Shown here piece after piece: positions 3,291 through 56,409 of a stretch of 64,000 nucleotides of DNA. Both the position numbers and the translations under genes were made by a program. Source of the stretch: Ranitomeya imitator (lineage: Eukaryota). The first letter of the stretch is position 1. Each line of letters starts with the position of its first letter. The notes below the pieces were generated by a model. The model made no database searches, was not told the origin of the DNA, and saw nothing but the letters and a program-made list of their open reading frames with translations. The stretch covers positions 187,674,001 through 187,738,000 of the forward strand of contig NC_091283.1 of assembly GCF_032444005.1 (NCBI RefSeq), read 5' to 3'.

Positions 3291-3377
3291 CATACAGCCA
3301 ACCAATTCCAGCCCTGTGCTGATGAGGGCCTAAAGCCCGAAACACGTGTCCACAGGTAGGAATTGGTTGGCTGTGTA
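3291..3377 (+). ncRNA. Type I hammerhead ribozyme motif
   Basis: CTGATGA 3319-3325; stem II GGGC/GCCC with CTAAA loop; GAAA 3339-3342; palindromic stem III ACACGTGT; GTC cleavage triplet 3348-3350; stem I CCTGTG/CACAGG extended by 16 perfect pairs (3294-3309 with 3359-3374). Confidence 0.9.
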
Positions 3378-22136: not shown

Positions 22137-24060
22137 TTACAGACGCAGCGTTGGGGCTCAATTACTTCCTGCATTCCTGAAGAAGACCTGGCACCGGCAC
22201 CAGCACGATTTGCCGATTTATCCGAATTTTGCTGTATTTATTTTTTTCTTAGATTTATACAGTGGTCTTAAAATAGTTGCAAGTAATGAGTATCTGGGGG
22301 GATTTTTCTCTCCAGCTGGGGATTTTGTTTGAACTGAGAATTTTTAGAAACTACTTCAAAGTACCCAGCATTTTCTCCTTCAGCAGGGGAGATCTGGAGC
22401 TGTGACTGAAGATCCTGGGAATGATTTAATTACCAGATAAGAGATCCTGGACCCCATCTCTTATCTGCCTTGTCTGCAGCATTGCTCCCAGAGATCATGG
22501 TCTGCAGATTATAGGAGTTTTTAGCATATGGCTTTCAGATTGTAGCAGTCGGCCTCCTGTACTCCACAGTTTTCCCTAAAGAAGACATGATATGGTTTTG
22601 CAACTTTAGGGCTAAAACAGCAACTTTTTGGAATTTTAGGTTACAAGGTTATGCTGCAAGTAATCATTATGGTCCCATTGCAACAAAACAGTTTGCAGAA
22701 ATCCAAACTTTCTGTATTTCAGTGCGACCACAATCATTTTCATTTGTTGCGATTTTAGCAATTAGAAATTATCGAATTTTTTACATTTCAAATTTGCCTG
22801 CCTCGTTGATCTTTTCCCCACAAATTTTATTAATACATTTGCTGCAAACTGCTCCTAAAAGGTGTGGGTAACACTCTGAGGTCCTCTAGGACTGTATGTA
22901 TCCAACCCATTTCAAGCTCTTTAATGAAAACAGTCTCAGTAATATCAAAGTAACCTCCACATATTGCATACAGCTGTAGTAAAAGGGATATTATCATTAC
23001 TTCCCTGCTGTTTTTTTCTGAGTTATTTTGTTTTGATAAAATGATAACTGCAAGGGATTATGGGAAAGCCCGCCCAGCCGAGCCCCCAGTCATGTGAGCC
23101 TTCTCTGGCTCATGCAATCCTCTACATTGGGCATTTTTGCCTATTTTACAAATTTGGCGAAGTTACCAGAACCTACACTAATTCAATTCGCATTAAAACA
23201 ATTTGCTCATCCCTAATTGTGATCTCAAAGAGGTTTGAAGAAATTTTCTGAAATTTGTCAGTGCGCCAGAGTAATAAGATACACAGAACTCCCGTTTTGG
23301 ATCATCTCCAGTGATCCCTGCCAGTCCCGCACGTGATCACGTACATCACTTACCAATCACTGACCACCACAGTCATGTGTCGTACATGGTCCTATCATAA
23401 GAAGATCCTAGCAGTGTAGATGACACTTGGTAAGCCTGTGCCCAGGTAGAGATTTGGCCCAGAAACTACATCATGATCTCATGACCCAGATTATATTGCA
23501 GTAAAAGTCCTTTAATCCACCATCAATGACACATAATGGGTGGAGGATAACCAAATATTAATTCAGTCAATAGTGATAGAAAAGTGAAAAGAAACTCTAG
23601 AAAAAAAGACTATAACTCAACTTATTATAAAAATGAAACAGGTTAGTGAAAATCTAGAAATTATATAGATTTATTATGTAGATTTATTCATTTACATACT
23701 ATATCAAATGTATGCTAGCATTAAAAATGGTGGCATGTGGTATCATTGGTAATTAATTGGCGGCTTCGGGCAATGCTTTTTCACTGGGTCTCAATATGTC
23801 GACTTTTATCCTCTGTTCTCACCTCTTGAACCAAACCTATACGGCTATATATACAATGATTAGCTGTGGAAGGGGAGGACTAAGTGCTAACAAGCCACCC
23901 AGTATGGCTACAACCAATGCACTCAACCTAAACCAGCCAAACCTTACCCTACCTGCCAAATATCCTGATATTGCCGCACACTTTGGGGACATTCCCACAG
24001 GTGAATATAAAAGAACCTGGCACTTAACTTAAATGCGTGTGGCTTTAAAAATATATTGCG

Positions 24061-24111
24061 TAGTACCAACAAAACGTTTCGGTCTTATTCAACCTTCTTC
24101 AGTTACGTACT
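24061..24111 (-). ncRNA. Minimal type I hammerhead ribozyme motif (variant with extra A)
   Basis: Minus strand: AGTACGTAA-CTGAAGA-A-GGTT-GAATAA-GACC-GAAAC-GTT-TTGTTGGTACT. Palindromic AACGTT stem III, GUU triplet, bulged stem I. Confidence 0.55.
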
Positions 24112-24450
24112 TAGAGTAAAATTGCGTGTCGCTTTGTGCATATGTCCAGTGGGTATGGTTAGAGTCACTGGGGTACCGGTGCCCTGCTCATGGGGTGGGC
24201 TGAGAGCTGTTGCCGTCCGGAGCTTGTCAGTGCCGTGTCCACCGCTTGTCAGTGCATGTGCCGGAGTCCCACAGGTGAGGCTTAAATATCCCCATTGTGG
24301 ACTTTAAATAATTGCTGAGTATGCTTTAACTTCCAGCAATATGTCCATCATATGTACCCAAGCATTGTATTTTGGTATCAATCGAGACAAGAAGTATATC
24401 CAAATTTTGGTAAGTTCACACTATTGCCATGCTCACGCATCTGTCTTTTT

Positions 24451-27400
24451 CTAAACCTCCCGAATCTTCATTTCCACATGCTTGTATGAGTAGTTATGCC
24501 CTTTTCCAGTAAACCAGTTGATGCCATCCCCATAAGAAGTGTGTGCTCCTAGGTGGTATAATCCATTGAGGTTTGCCCCGTGACAGTTGCTATACCACCA
24601 GCCTCCTTTATAGAGTAGGGAACAACTACCCTCGTAAATGTCGTTGTCCTCATCTTTAGTACTAAACTTGATGTTGCTTAGACCTCCGATGGAATCTCCT
24701 GCAAAATTGTAAAGACGGACATGTCAAATATTAGAACGGCTTGTCATATACTAAACGATCATCTTTATAGAAGCAATGACCTACATAAAAGTGTGAGGAC
24801 TCCATAGCAAAGGTCAAAATGTCCCACCTGGCCTCAGGACAGAAGGGCTTTTCCTTCGCTTAGCGCATCACACCTACAGTACAATTTTCAACCCGCCAGT
24901 TTATTAATACTACAGTTCCTTTGGAAAGTCCAGTTTTACATGGAGTTAAACCAACTTTCAAAAAGGACATTTTGGCCAAATTGCTTCTCACCTGTGTTGA
25001 GGAGAGCCATAAGATCAAATACTTAATTAACCCCAAGACATAAGAGATTGAGAGAAGCGACCCATAACGTGTATTGTTTGATCTTACATAAGTTTTTTTA
25101 GATGAAAGTAAGACACTAAAGATGGCTGCCATTTCCTGTATCAGAGAGCCATTTGGCTGCCTGGCTGGTATCCAAGATGACGCCCACCCTGGTGACCTCA
25201 TGGATCCACCCACAGTGACGCCCACCTTGATGACCTCATGGACCAACCCACCCTGATGACCTCATGGATCCACCCATGGACTTGCTCATTGCCCAACCCA
25301 CTAACCAATGGAATGCATCCGATCACTCCCATTTTAGAGCTAACCGAGCCCCCTTACAGGGGATATATAAATCTGTGTCTTGCCTGAATAAAGTCTCTTT
25401 TTCCCTTGCAGCTGGGCCATAGATTGATCATGGAGAGTTTACATATGACTGTGTGTTGTTATATGTTTATTTCTTTGGTGCGCACCTGATCAATATCCAT
25501 TAGGCCAGGAGTAGGCAACTTAAGTGAAGTGAACATTTTATTAAATTGTTCAACCTAATAATTTAATATCCATTAGGCCAGGAGTAGGCAACTTAAGTGA
25601 AGTGAACATTTTATTAAATTGTTCAACCTAATACCTGCAGTTCCTTCCTTAAAGGCTCCAATTAATAACTCATATTTCTTAGATTCATCCAAAACTTTGA
25701 AGCTTGCATACTTGGCGAACACCTTTTTACCTTCAAAATCTTGTAGATCAATGCGTAATTCCCATGTTCCTTCATAGAGAAAGATAATTTAGAAACTGGA
25801 GGCTAATAACACAAAGCATTGAAGAATTTGTCCAATACCAAACCCATTCAGAAAACATAGAGGAGTCCATAAAAAGTGAACCATTCTAGGTAACGTTACC
25901 TGGAGCCGAGATCTGGTGTCTTCATAAGGATAGGAACCTATACTCAGGTCAGCTCATCTATTCCTGGTCTTATGACAGGAGGGGGTTGAAGGTGATATCT
26001 TTTGCTGCAATAGCTAAATTATTTGTATAGAATGCTTAGGCCTCCATAGTTTTTAGATGTGACCTACAAGAGGTGGTGAGGGATCTTCAGAATAGTGAGG
26101 TGGTTTTAAAATGAGTCCAACTTTGGCTGGATGTTGACCACCAAGACTCTTCTCTAACTTTTTTTACTTAAGGCCCCTTCACATTTAGCGACGCTGCAGC
26201 GATACCGACAACGATCCGAATCGCTGCAGCGTCGCTGTTTGGTCGCTGGAGAGCTGTCACACAGACCGCTCTCCAGCGACCAACGATGCCGGTAACCAGG
26301 GTAAACATCGGGTAACTAAGCGCAGGGCCGCGCTTAGTAACCCGATGTTTACCCTGGTTACCATGCTAAAAGTAAAAAAAAAACAAACAGTACATACTTA
26401 CCTACAGCCGTCTGTCCTCCAGCGCTGCGATCTGCTTCTCTGCTCTCCTCCTGTACTGTCTGTGAGCCGGAAAGCAGAGCGGTGACGTCACCGCTCTGCT
26501 TTCCGGCTCACAGCCAGTACAGGAGGAGTGCAGAGCACAGCGCTGGAGGACAGACGGCTGTAGGTAAGTATGTACTGTTTGTTTTTTTTTACTTTTAGCA
26601 TGGTAACCAGGGTAAACATCGGGTTACTAAGCGCGGCCCTGCGCTTAGTTACCCGATGTTTACCCTGGTTACCAGTGAAGACATCGCTGGATCGGTGTCA
26701 CACACGCCGATCCAGCGATGTCTCCAGGGAGTCCAGCGACGAAATAAAGTTCTGGACTTTATTCAGCGACCAACGATCTCCCAGCAGGGGCCTGATCGTT
26801 GGTCGCTGTCACACATAACGATTTCATTAACGATATCGTTGCTACGTCACAAATAGCAACGATATCGTTAACAATATCGTTATGTGTGAAGGTACCTTTA
26901 GAGTTTTTTTCTTAGATTCAGGGGCAGATGATAAATAAAACAAATAAAGAAAAACAAGGTCAACTAGTCCATGACAAACGATAATCAACCACTTAAGGTA
27001 CCGTCACATTTAGCAACGCTGCAGCGATCTAGACAACGATGCCGATCGCTGCAGTGTCGCTGTGTGGTCGCTGGAGAGCTGTCACACGGACAGCTCTCCA
27101 GCGACCAACGATGCCGAAGTCCCCAGGTAACCAGGGTAAACATCGGGTTACTAAGCGCATGACCGCGCTTAGTAACCCGATGTTTACCCTGGTTACCAGT
27201 GTAAATGTAAAAAAAAAAAAAAAAAACACTACATACTTACATTCCGGTGTCTGTCGCGTCCCCCGGCGTTCAGCTTCCCTGCACTGTGTAAGCGCCGGCC
27301 GTAAAGCAGAGCGGTGACGTCATCGCTGTGCTTTACGGCCAGCCGGCGCTCACAGTCAGTGCAGGGAAGCAGAACGCCGGGGGACGCGACAGACACCGGA

Positions 27401-30400
27401 ATGTAAGTATGTAGTGTTTTTTTTTTTTACATTTACACTGGTAACCAGGGTAAACATCGGGTTACTAAGCACGGCCCTGCGCTTAGTAACCCGATGTTTA
27501 CCCTGGTTACCAGTGAAGACATCGCTGAATTGGCGTCACACACGCCGATTCAGCGATGTCTGCGGGAGATCCAGCGACGAAATAAAGTTCTGGCCTTTCT
27601 GCTCCGACCAACGATGTCACAGCAGGATCCAGATCGCTGCTGCGTTTCAAACACAACGAGATCGCTATCCAGGACACTGCAACATCACGGATCGCTAGCG
27701 ATATCGTTGTTAAGTTGTTCAGTGTGAAGGTACCTTTATGGACCTTTTAACCTTGGATACACAGTATGAGTCGACAAATCAATAAGGAGATGATCCACAG
27801 GTTTCTCGTTACCTGTTGAGGTTACATGATGAATATTTTCATTCCCAAGCCAAAATTCATTCAGCCGACTTCCAAACCCTTTCTTATAAGCATCCCAGGT
27901 ACGGAAGAAGTCCACCGACCCATCCCAACGTCTTTGTATGACCTAAAGCAAGAAAAAGACCAGATTATTTGGCCAGGACTACTGTTTCCGGACATACAGT
28001 ACAGACAAAAAGTTTGGACACACCTTCTCATTTAAAGATTTTTCTGTACTTTCATAACTATGAAAATTGTACATTCAAACTGAAGGCAACAAAACTATGA
28101 ATTAACACATGTGGAATTATATACTTAATTTCAGTTGTTTCACACTTTTTTGTTATGTCTTATATTCTAGGTTCTTCAAAGTAGCCACCTTTTGCTTTGA
28201 TGATTGCTTTGCACACTCTTGGCATTCTCTTGATGAGTTTCAAGAGGTAGTCACCGGGAATGGTCTTCCAACAATCTTGAAGGAGTTCCCAGAGATGCTT
28301 AGCACTTGTTGGCCCTTTTGCCTTCACTCTGCGGTCCAGCTCACCCCAAACCATCTCGATTGGGTTCAGGTCTGGTGACTGTGGAGGCCAGGTCATCTGG
28401 CGTAGCACCCCATCACTCTCCTTCTTGGTCAAATAGCCCTTACACAGCCTGGAGGTGTTTTTGGGGTAATTGTCCTGTTGAAAAATAAATGATGGTCCAA
28501 CTAAACGCAAACCGGATGGAATAGCATGCCGCTGCTAGATGCTGTAGTAGCCATGCTGGTTCAGTGTGCCTTCAATTTTGAATAAATCCCCAACAGTGTC
28601 ACCAGCAAAGCACCCCCACACCATCATACCTCCTCCTCCATGCTTCACGGTGAGAACCAGGCATGTAGAGTCCATCCGTTCACCTTTTCTGCGTCGCACA
28701 AAGACACTGTGGTTGGAACCAAAGATCTGAAATTTGGACTCATCTGACCAAAGCACAGATTGCCACTGGTCTAATGTCCATTCCTTCTGTTCTTTAGCCC
28801 AAACAAGTCTCTTCTGCTTGTTGCCCTTAGCAGTGGTTTCCTAGCAGCTATTTTACCATGAAGGCCTGCTGCACAAAGTCTCCTCTTAACAGTTGTTGTA
28901 GAGATGTGTCTGCTGCTAGAACTCTGTGTGGCATTGACCTGGTCTCTAATCTGAGCTGCTGTTAACCTGCGATTTCTGAGGCTGGTGACTCGGATAAACT
29001 TATCCTCAGAAGCAGAGGTGACTCTTGGTCTTCCTTTCCAGGGGCAATCCTCATGTGAGCCAGTTTCTTTGTAGTGCTTGATGGTTTTTGCCACTGCACT
29101 TGGGGAAACTTTCAAAGTTTTCCCAATTTTTCGGACTGACTGACCTTCATTTCTTAAAGTGATGATGGCCACTCGTTTTTCTTTACTTAGCTGGTTATTT
29201 CTTGCCATAATACAAATTCTAACAGTCTATTCAGTAGGACTATCAGCTGTGTATCCACCAGACTTCTGCACAACACAACTGATGATCCCAACCCCATTTA
29301 TAAGGCAAGAAATCCCACTTATTAAACCTGACAGGGCACACCTGTGAAGTGAAAACCATTCCCGGTGACTACCTCTTGAAGCTCATCAAGAGAATGCCAA
29401 GAGTGTACAAAGCAGTCATCAAAACAAAAGGTGGCTACTTTAAAGAACCTAGAATATAAGACATAATTTCAGTTGTTTCACACTTTTTTGTTAAGTATAT
29501 AATTCCACATGTGTTAATTCATAGTTTTGATGCCTTCAGTGTGAATTTACAGTTTTCATAGTCATGAAAATACTGAAAAATCTTTAAATGAGAAGGTGTG
29601 TCCAAACTTTTGGTCTGTACTGTATAATAGATTATAATAGATCTAGTCAAGGCAATGTAGTCTACTAGAAGGCTATAATTTTTTTTTACAAACAAGGGTC
29701 CTTGCCCACCAAAAAGAAAATCTCCTATAGGAGAACTACAAAGGCGTCAATTGAGTGGAGTAAATTCAAGTTCTTGGGGCAAAACTTGTAACAGGGTCAC
29801 CACCTATTATTATTATTTATTTATATAGCACCATTGATTCCATGGTGCTGTACATGAGAATCATAAGCCATTTATTGTACTGTTGTCGTCTTATATGGCA
29901 GAGGGCCCTTTTGTTCCTTTTAGACATTAGGATCCATGTTTGACTGAGTCCTTAATAGCCCAATTAAAGGAGACGATACATTCGCAATGGATCTGGACTT
30001 TCCAGAAAAATCTTCTGATTGTGGCTTCCACTGACGCTGTAAATACTTACAATCCATCCCCCTTCATCTGTGTCCATATCACACAGGACCTTCAGAGGCT
30101 GGCTGCCATCTGGGTATATCGTGTACCAGTCACTGAACACTGACCCCTGATTGTGTACTTCTTTGCAGCTCCTGGCAGCTATGAGACATATAAATACAAA
30201 TTAATTCAAAGGTGTCTAGTAAAATCACATTCAAACACCCCTTTAGGGCATTTTGAGTGATGGAAGTGCTGAATGTAAGTCCGCAAGGACAGGGTCCTCT
30301 CCCCTCTGTACCAGTCTGTTATTGTAAATTTGTTTACTGTAGAAGATATCTATAACTCTGTATGTAACCCCTTTCTCATGTACAGCACCAAGGAATTCAT

Positions 30401-50747: not shown

Positions 50748-56409
<5,662 letters not shown>

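What the first reader, a model, noticed from the sequence alone, without database searches (positions are those of the whole stretch)
24061..24111. Hammerhead ribozyme motif in sense orientation in the predicted 3' UTR of a lectin (ficolin B) gene
Seen: about 340 nt downstream of the ficolin B stop, on the coding strand, lies CTGAAGA-A-GGTT(GAATAA)GACC-GAAAC-GTT with a bulged stem I and a palindromic AACGTT stem III. I find no AATAAA or ATTAAA between the stop and this motif; the first AATAAA signals (23683-23688, 23670-23675) lie beyond it, whereas paralog A has ATTAAA about 160 nt after its stop. The motif sits in a block with a partial ~275-bp direct repeat (CCCACAGGTGA...CTTAAAT...GTGG.CTTTAAA at ~23994 and ~24267). 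Known: minimal hammerheads with palindromic stem III are typical of Penelope-like elements and cleave as dimers, and rodent Clec2 lectin mRNAs carry 3' UTR hammerheads that reduce expression. Inference: a retroelement-derived ribozyme may have entered an innate-immune lectin mRNA, where cleavage would remove the poly(A) tail, possibly only at high transcript concentration.
Basis: partly seen in the sequence, partly recalled or inferred. Interest (0 to 1): 0.8.

Follow-up and report, generated by a model that had tools for sequence, protein, structure and literature searches.

The report
Minimal hammerhead relic in lectin UTR
The 3' untranslated region of a poison-frog ficolin-like lectin mRNA carries, in sense, the complete core of the "minimal" hammerhead ribozyme typical of Penelope-like retroelements, but assembled transcripts run uncut through it and lone copies of this ribozyme type are known to be nearly inactive, so it is most likely an inert retroelement relic.

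Summary
It has both catalytic boxes, a G10.1-C11.1 pair, one extra base between A9 and G10.1, and C15.2-G16.2 with no loop 3. These are the hallmarks of the Penelope-like-element (PLE) "min-HHR" (PMC4209133). Chance is unlikely: 40 Mb of random sequence gave 0 matches with the G-C pair.

Transcript contigs from three studies show that the 3' UTR runs from the stop (24453-24451) to about 23657-23631, just past the only two AATAAA signals. The motif is therefore in the mature mRNA, in sense.

The proposed regulatory cleavage is not supported:
- Contigs bridge the cut site without a break.
- Only one copy is present, with no tandem partner.
- Helix III can form only between two molecules, with a predicted Kd of about 60 µM.
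- The best predicted dimer buries A13 and A14.
- Single min-HHRs show no detectable cleavage in vitro.

Rfam finds nothing, but it also misses a complete min-HHR used as a control.

One contig in run X1 shares 57 nt or fewer ending at the cut site. It then continues with sequence that would make a much better helix I, which hints at a more intact family copy elsewhere.

The scan has already noted many hammerhead retroelements elsewhere in this genome. Verdict: a new member of a known kind, of low to moderate interest.

The parts
24454..24697 (-). Last coding exon of the ficolin-like gene (Fibrinogen_C domain). The stop TAG follows at 24453-24451.
   Evidence: Pfam PF00147, E = 1.2e-23. A spliced joint skips 24698-25633 with GT..AG on the minus strand in run X10.
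23657..24450 (-). 3' UTR as assembled from RNA, about 794 nt. The 3' end lies near 23657 (X13) or 23631 (X5).
   Evidence: Contigs: X1 23782-24701, X13 23657-24024 and 24026-24701, X5 23631-23814 and 24000-24252. There is no cover over 23000-23563 or over the intron at 24786-24973.
24062..24111 (-). Minimal type I hammerhead motif: helix I 5' strand, CUGAAGA, extra A, helix II (4 bp, 6-nt loop), GAAA, C-G, U, U17, helix I 3' strand. Predicted cut between 24073 and 24072.
   Evidence: Sequence; descriptor scan; hammerhead-constrained fold -8.7 against an MFE of -13.1 kcal/mol.
24071..24080 (-). Palindrome GAAACGUUUU/AAACGUUU. It would form helix III only between two molecules. The most stable dimer uses 8 or more bp and covers A13, A14 and U17.
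   Evidence: RNAcofold and duplex energies.
23670..23688 (-). Two AATAAA poly(A) signals (23688-83 and 23675-70) inside a 13-nt x 2.2 tandem duplication.
   Evidence: Hexamer scan; TRF; contig ends just downstream.
24267..24278 (-). Upstream copy of the exact 12-mer TCACCTGTGGGA, a possible target-site duplication.
   Evidence: p about 0.008 locally. The 12-mer also occurs at 19813-19802, so the support is weak.
23993..24004 (-). Downstream copy of the same 12-mer, 274 nt from the first. The two copies bracket the GC-rich segment and the hammerhead.
24109..24135 (-). 27-nt imperfect direct repeat, copy 1, directly upstream of the hammerhead.
   Evidence: Local alignment against 24046-24022: score 25, p about 0.004.
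24022..24046 (-). 27-nt imperfect direct repeat, copy 2, 89 nt downstream of copy 1.

Best explanation
This is a decayed, solitary copy of a Penelope-like-element or retrozyme-type minimal hammerhead (min-HHR). It now lies, in sense, about 340 nt into the roughly 800-nt 3' UTR of a ficolin-like gene. It is transcribed as ordinary UTR sequence and the mRNA is polyadenylated about 415 nt beyond it. The motif keeps the full catalytic core, but it lacks what this ribozyme class needs to cut: a second copy nearby to build helix III, and probably a retroelement protein. It also has a short helix II and a weak, bulged helix I. It therefore does not cleave the mRNA to any meaningful extent.

Shown: the motif, its position in the mature mRNA, and uncut molecules. 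Inferred: the retroelement origin and the inactivity.
For: Fit to the min-HHR kind:
- The core and three emergent min-HHR features are present: a base between A9 and G10.1, the G10.1-C11.1 pair, and palindromic 15.2-16.2 without loop 3 (against PMC4209133).
- Chance rate is at most about 0.2 per Mb for the loose descriptor, and 0 in 40 Mb with the G-C pair. About 9000 min-HHRs are reported in Xenopus tropicalis.
- Complete min-HHRs with the same boxes (CUGAAGA-A-GGUU...GACC-GAAAC) occur in unrelated metagenomic, eukaryote-like DNA: L003, L015 and L007, with helix I of 4-5 bp.
- An X1 contig shares 57 nt or fewer ending at 24071. Its continuation would give a far better helix I (-18.4 against -6.8 kcal/mol; 7 of 500 shuffles as good), which suggests a family copy elsewhere.

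Position in the mRNA, and no sign of cutting:
- RNA contigs from three studies cross the cut site and reach the AATAAA region.
- There is no tandem or second copy.
- Dimer Kd is predicted at about 6e-5 M, in a non-catalytic register.
- The hammerhead fold lies 4.4 kcal/mol above the MFE, against 1.2 for the canonical control at 3301-3373.

Literature:
- Single min-HHRs are inactive in vitro.
- Xenopus retrozyme copies that overlap exons lie mostly in 3' UTRs.
Against: - Family membership could not be shown. There is no other copy in the window, no hit in the scan's index, and no frog genome is searchable here.
- Helix II is 4 bp, shorter than the 6-8 bp described for PLE min-HHRs.
- There is no PLE ORF or pseudo-LTR nearby.
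- The possible target-site duplication is only a 12-mer, and it also occurs a third time in the window.
- Contigs cannot measure partial cleavage, so a low level of cutting is not excluded.
Confidence: 0.62

Rival explanations
1. It is a chance match. The two boxes and the short complementary runs arose by chance in AT-rich UTR sequence, and there is no ribozyme ancestry.
For: - No Rfam hammerhead model scores it, even at E<=10 in 101-401 nt.
- Folding is no better than shuffles, z = -0.22.
- No relative was found in the window.
- Helices I and II are short and contain G-U pairs.
Against: - The descriptor with G10.1-C11.1 gave 0 hits in 40 Mb of random sequence.
- The extra base after A9 and the C-G palindrome are class hallmarks that were not selected for.
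- Rfam also misses a complete min-HHR, L003, so its silence means little.
- An independent contig shares the motif and would give a significantly better helix I.
Confidence: 0.12
2. It is a working regulatory ribozyme. The motif cleaves the ficolin mRNA and removes the poly(A) tail, either as an RNA dimer or with the help of a Penelope-like-element protein or another chaperone. That would tune lectin expression in the way proposed for the Clec2 3' UTR hammerheads.
For: - The catalytic core is intact and in sense in a real 3' UTR.
- A PLE hammerhead has been shown to be protein-assisted.
- Clec2 provides a precedent.
- The X1 contig junction lies within 2 nt of the predicted cut.
Against: - Uncut RNA was assembled across the site in three studies, including libraries in which only the distal UTR is represented.
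- It is a single copy.
- The predicted Kd of about 60 µM is orders of magnitude above mRNA concentrations (the concentration comparison is my estimate), and the favoured dimer is non-catalytic.
- Min-HHRs cleave poorly even as dimers.
- No conservation data are available.
Confidence: 0.07
3. The hammerhead did not insert into a UTR. The relic lay in downstream intergenic DNA and came into the mRNA when the gene lost a proximal poly(A) signal and began to read through to the AATAAA pair at 23688-23670.
For: - Paralog A uses ATTAAA about 160 nt after its stop.
- The two UTRs are homologous only for the first 95 nt or so (z = 5.5).
- B has no canonical hexamer before 23688.
Against: - Beyond 95 nt no homology is detectable, so loss of the signal cannot be shown.
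- The 12-mer direct repeats bracketing the block would fit an insertion instead.
Confidence: 0.3

Closest known systems
Minimal hammerheads (min-HHR) of Penelope-like elements (Cervera & de la Pena 2014, PMC4209133)
   Same: - Type I topology with CUGANGA and GAAA boxes.
- An unpaired base between A9 and G10.1, and a G10.1-C11.1 pair.
- Palindromic 15.2-16.2 with no loop 3, so helix III can form only between two copies.
- A short helix I.
- Most genomic copies are solitary.
- Abundant in frogs.
   Different: - Helix II is 4 bp instead of 6-8.
- No pseudo-LTR or PLE ORF is nearby.
- No demonstrated consensus family.
- It sits in an expressed 3' UTR.
Amphibian non-LTR retrozymes / newt satellite-2 hammerheads (PMC7229834; preprint 10.64898/2026.07.22.740005)
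   Same: - Type I hammerheads with a weak helix III that need dimers.
- Very common in this frog genome, according to earlier notes of this scan.
- Exon-overlapping copies in Xenopus lie mostly in 3' UTRs.
   Different: - No 170-400-bp tandem unit here.
- Those hammerheads keep a 1-bp stem plus a palindromic tetraloop and loop-loop contacts, and they score with Rfam models. The example at 3301-3373 does so.
Discontinuous hammerhead in rodent Clec2 3' UTRs (Martick et al. 2008, as reviewed in PMC6155905)
   Same: A hammerhead in sense in the 3' UTR of a lectin-family immune gene, upstream of the poly(A) site.
   Different: - Clec2 is a type III motif split by a 150-1500-nt insertion in helix I.
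- It has stable helices, is active as a single molecule, and is conserved among several mammals.
- None of this is shown here.
CChMVd hammerhead with an extra base between A9 and G10.1 (De la Pena & Flores 2001, cited in PMC6155905)
   Same: It shows that an extra base at this core position is compatible with catalysis.
   Different: It is a viroid type III ribozyme with full helices.

Membership tests
PLE minimal hammerhead (min-HHR) | Catalytic boxes C3-A9 and G12-A14, A15.1/U16.1, and H17 that is not G | tested here: met
   CUGAAGA, GAAA, A..U, U17 at 24102-24073.
PLE minimal hammerhead (min-HHR) | Unpaired base between A9 and G10.1, and a G10.1-C11.1 pair | tested here: met
   A at 24095; G 24094 pairs with C 24081. 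The feature list comes from PMC4209133.
PLE minimal hammerhead (min-HHR) | Palindromic 15.2-16.2, with no loop 3 or a palindromic one | tested here: met
   C 24076 and G 24075 are adjacent, forming the ACGU palindrome.
PLE minimal hammerhead (min-HHR) | Enlarged helix II (6-8 bp) | tested here: not met
   Only 4 bp including one G-U, with a 6-nt loop.
PLE minimal hammerhead (min-HHR) | Belongs to a genomic consensus family with covariation, or lies in a PLE pseudo-LTR | tested here: inconclusive
   - No copy in the window, and no PLE ORF nearby.
- One X1 contig shares the motif and would give a better helix I.
- The frog genome is not searchable with these tools.
PLE minimal hammerhead (min-HHR) | A second copy close by, so that a dimer can form | tested here: not met
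   No tandem or nearby copy of this motif. The only other hammerhead in the window is a different type, 20.7 kb away on the other strand.
PLE minimal hammerhead (min-HHR) | Self-cleavage at H17 | not testable with these tools
   Only contigs were available. They bridge the site, which shows that uncut RNA exists but gives no rate.
Rfam hammerhead families (clan CL00010) | Score against the covariance models | tested here: not met
   - No match at gathering score or at E<=10.
- Control 3301-3373 scores 30.1 bits with HH9.
- A complete min-HHR (L003) is also missed, so the test is insensitive for this subclass.
Non-LTR retrozyme | Tandem units of 170-400 bp, each with a type I hammerhead | tested here: not met
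   No tandem array. Only a 12-mer and a 27-mer direct repeat are present.
Clec2-type 3' UTR hammerhead | Discontinuous type III motif, active as a monomer and conserved in orthologues | tested here: not met
   - The topology here is contiguous type I with no intramolecular helix III.

The most novel reading that the evidence does not exclude
A Penelope-type minimal hammerhead has been co-opted as a conditional switch in an innate-immune lectin mRNA. It would stay silent on its own and cut off the poly(A) tail only when a retroelement protein or RNA chaperone is present, for example when PLEs are de-repressed. That would couple lectin output to transposon activity. The X1 contig junction within 2 nt of the cut site would then be a trace of cleavage followed by ligation to another RNA.
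Probability: 0.04. Interest if true: 0.75.

Novelty: new member of a known kind. Interest (0 to 1): 0.27.

Why it matters
If the motif were active, it would be the first vertebrate case outside mammals of a hammerhead controlling an immune lectin mRNA, and the first assigned cellular role for a PLE min-HHR. As it stands, it is a documented example of something recently reported statistically in Xenopus: hammerhead-bearing retroelement fragments that survive in genes are found mainly in 3' UTRs. It also shows that an intact catalytic core in a mature mRNA is tolerated when the ribozyme depends on a partner copy. A practical point follows for screening: Rfam models do not detect this subclass, so an empty Rfam result should not be taken as evidence against a min-HHR.

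Tried and rejected
- **Rfam.** Searches at gathering score and at E<=10 found nothing. A complete min-HHR control is also missed, so this does not count as evidence.
- **Hammerhead on the + strand.** I looked next to the TCCCACAGGT repeats, which resemble helix I of the 3319 hammerhead. No core boxes are present, so I rejected this.
- **Other copies in the window.** BLAST at word sizes 9 and 7 found none. The 11-mer hits at 54153 and 8497 are unrelated.
- **X1 loose end as a spliced downstream exon.** A GT follows 24071 on the minus strand, but the 30 loose letters are absent from the whole window. This is unlikely, not excluded.
- **Paralog A as an 'empty site'.** Homology stops about 95 nt after the stop codon.
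- **Repeat family through an overlapping ORF.** The 83-aa ORF at 24056-24304(+) has no homologue.
- **Orthologous UTRs through the last-exon protein.** The best hit is only 73% identical and its UTR is unrelated.
- **The scan's own index by sequence.** The search came back blank.
- **Fold-back element at 53296-54071 as a hammerhead source.** It shows no hammerhead signal.

Full report
**The observation**

- C3-A9 is CUGAAGA at 24102-24096, followed by one extra A at 24095.
- Helix II is GGUU/GACC (24094-24091 with 24084-24081) and closes a GAAUAA loop.
- G12-A14 lie at 24080-24078. A15.1, C15.2, G16.2 and U16.1 lie at 24077-24074. U17 is at 24073.
- The predicted scissile bond is therefore 24073|24072.
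- Helix I is three pairs next to the core, then a small internal loop, then five more pairs (AGUAC with GUACU). It ends at 24111 and 24062.

The gene context also checks out.
- The stop codon is at 24453-24451, so the motif begins 340 nt downstream.
- The last exon is a Fibrinogen_C domain. Its nearest named relatives in other frogs are 'ficolin-like'.
- The only AATAAA hexamers are at 23688-83 and 23675-70. There is no ATTAAA, and the weak AATACA lies at 24371-66.
- Paralog A (last exon 39562-39320) has ATTAAA about 160 nt after its stop.

**Is it more than chance?**

I wrote a descriptor for the loose class: CUGANGA, 0-1 extra base, helix II of at least 4 bp, GAAA, a Watson-Crick 15.2-16.2 pair with no loop or a palindromic 2-4-nt loop, U16.1, and H17.
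- In 40 Mb of first-order Markov sequence with the window's composition it matched 9 times. It matched 0 times once G10.1-C11.1 was required.
- The window (128 kb counting both strands) holds two matches. Both have the G-C pair and a helix I of 4 bp or more. One is this motif. The other is a canonical hammerhead at 3301-3373(+).
- Even allowing for the several hundred windows already read in this genome (754 carry notes), well under one chance hit of this quality is expected.
- True minimal hammerheads number about 9000 in Xenopus tropicalis (PMC4209133).

**What kind it is**

My first reading was that the extra A and the missing loop 3 were defects. The literature reverses that view. Cervera and de la Pena defined the PLE 'min-HHR' as a type I hammerhead without helix III or loop 3. 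They list four features that emerged unselected:
- a base between positions 9 and 10.1;
- a conserved G10.1-C11.1 pair;
- palindromic 15.2-16.2;
- membership of consensus families.

The candidate has the first three. It departs from the class in helix II, which is 4 bp rather than 6-8. The fourth feature could not be tested.

Rfam finds nothing at gathering score or at E<=10, while the canonical hammerhead at 3301-3373 scores 30.1 bits with HH9. This negative is not informative, because a complete min-HHR from a metagenome contig (L003) is also missed.

That contig came from a pattern scan for the candidate's own boxes, which returned 15 loci. Three of them (L003, L015, L007) are complete min-HHRs with a helix I of 4-5 bp and correct helix III positions, in ORF-free, eukaryote-like DNA. 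The same core variant therefore recurs in genuine members of the class.

**Is it in the mRNA?**

Yes. I laid contigs of four runs on 23000-25800. Three observations show that these runs are spliced RNA:
- They give no cover over the intron at 24786-24973 or over the intergenic stretch 23000-23563.
- One joint skips 24698-25633 with GT..AG on the minus strand.
- The X1 contig continues 48 nt past the exon edge into sequence that is not adjacent in the genome.

| Run | Contigs on the UTR |
|---|---|
| X1 | one 968-nt contig covers 23782-24701 with no mismatch |
| X13 | 23657-24024 and 24026-24701 |
| X5 | 23631-23814 and 24000-24252 |

The UTR therefore runs about 794 nt, to just beyond the doubled AATAAA. 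That doubling is a 13-nt tandem duplication. The motif stretch is held by 16 runs from 6 studies of the same species.

**Does it cut?**

Nothing here says so, and several points argue against it.
- Contigs from three studies bridge 24073|24072 by 47 nt or more on each side. One of them is from a study in which the distal UTR was assembled but the coding exon was not.
- There is one copy only, and helix III cannot form within one molecule.
- Predicted dimerisation of a 96-nt segment is -6.0 kcal/mol, which gives a Kd of about 6e-5 M. By my estimate, mRNAs are present at roughly nanomolar concentration or below.
- The favoured dimer pairs the longer palindrome AAACGUUU, which buries A13, A14 and U17. 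By contrast, the control hammerhead is predicted to form the textbook double hammerhead.
- The hammerhead-competent fold of the monomer lies 4.4 kcal/mol above the MFE, against 1.2 for the control. The region folds no better than shuffles.
- In the literature, a single min-HHR showed no detectable cleavage, and dimers or trimers cleaved only weakly. A lizard PLE hammerhead cleaved only with its own protein, and RNA-seq showed no ends at its site.

Contigs cannot exclude a low level of cleavage.

**Surroundings**

- The motif lies between two imperfect 27-nt direct repeats 89 nt apart (24135-24109 and 24046-24022, p about 0.004).
- It also lies inside a pair of exact 12-mers 274 nt apart (24278-24267 and 24004-23993, p about 0.008).
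- The 12-mers could be a target-site duplication around a 262-nt insert. The same 12-mer also occurs at 19813-19802, so I give this little weight.
- The two paralogs' UTRs are homologous only for the first 95 nt or so. I therefore cannot tell whether the relic inserted into an existing UTR, or whether the UTR grew over it after a proximal signal was lost.

**An unexplained lead**

In run X1 a second contig matches the window only within 24071-24127. It then continues for 231 nt with sequence that is absent from the window. The break lies within 2 nt of the predicted cut, and the run of U makes the exact point ambiguous.

I joined the window's 24127-24071 to the 30 reported letters and folded the result. 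The hammerhead-constrained fold improves from -6.8 to -18.4 kcal/mol, with a long helix I. Only 7 of 500 shuffles of those letters do as well.

This suggests a second, more intact family member elsewhere in the genome. It also suggests that the ficolin copy lost its native helix I strand at or near the cut site. Earlier notes of this scan describe retrozyme junctions exactly on cut sites in this genome. I did not check those notes, so they are leads rather than support. The inference assumes that the other copy has the same upstream strand, which I could not see.

**Comparison and verdict**

The motif works like, and most probably is, a PLE-type minimal hammerhead. It is not a retrozyme array, and it is not a Clec2-type discontinuous ribozyme. 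A 2026 preprint already reports that Xenopus retrozyme copies overlapping exons lie mostly in 3' UTRs.

This is a new member of a known kind. The proposed origin is probably right. The proposed regulatory cleavage is unsupported and mechanistically unlikely.

Noticed in passing
window 3301-3373 (+): Canonical type I hammerhead: CUGAUGA, a 4-bp helix II, a C-ACGU-G helix III and a very long helix I. HH9 scores it at 30.1 bits (E = 1e-5 locally), below Rfam's gathering score of 52. It is predicted to form a textbook double hammerhead as a dimer.
   Followed up: partly
window 24071 (run X1): A transcript contig shares 57 nt or fewer of the motif. It then diverges within 2 nt of the predicted cut into 231 nt that are not in the window, and the new sequence would pair well with the strand upstream of the core.
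   Followed up: partly
Other copies of this family are therefore strongly transcribed.
   Followed up: no
window 28160-29208 (-): ORFs in an intron of the ficolin-like gene look, by eye, like Tc1/mariner transposase remnants. No family search was run on them.
   Followed up: no
window 26100-27700: Several direct and inverted copies of a short repeat give near-identical small ORFs (MFTLVT...RVNIGLLSA). It looks like a MITE-like family nested in the intron.
   Followed up: no
window 54180-54300: Tandem repeat of a unit of about 29-30 nt (CCCCAGCTTCCTTCACTAGCC...), directly after the fold-back insertion at 53296-54071. That insertion shows no hammerhead signal in Rfam.
   Followed up: partly
window 23660-23688: The poly(A) signal is doubled by a 13-nt x 2.2 tandem duplication. 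Contig ends at 23657 and 23631 suggest that both may be used.
   Followed up: partly
L003 121-149, L015, L007 (metagenome contigs): Complete Penelope-type minimal hammerheads with the same core boxes as the frog motif, in ORF-free contigs. They presumably come from host or other eukaryote DNA in metagenomes.
   Followed up: partly
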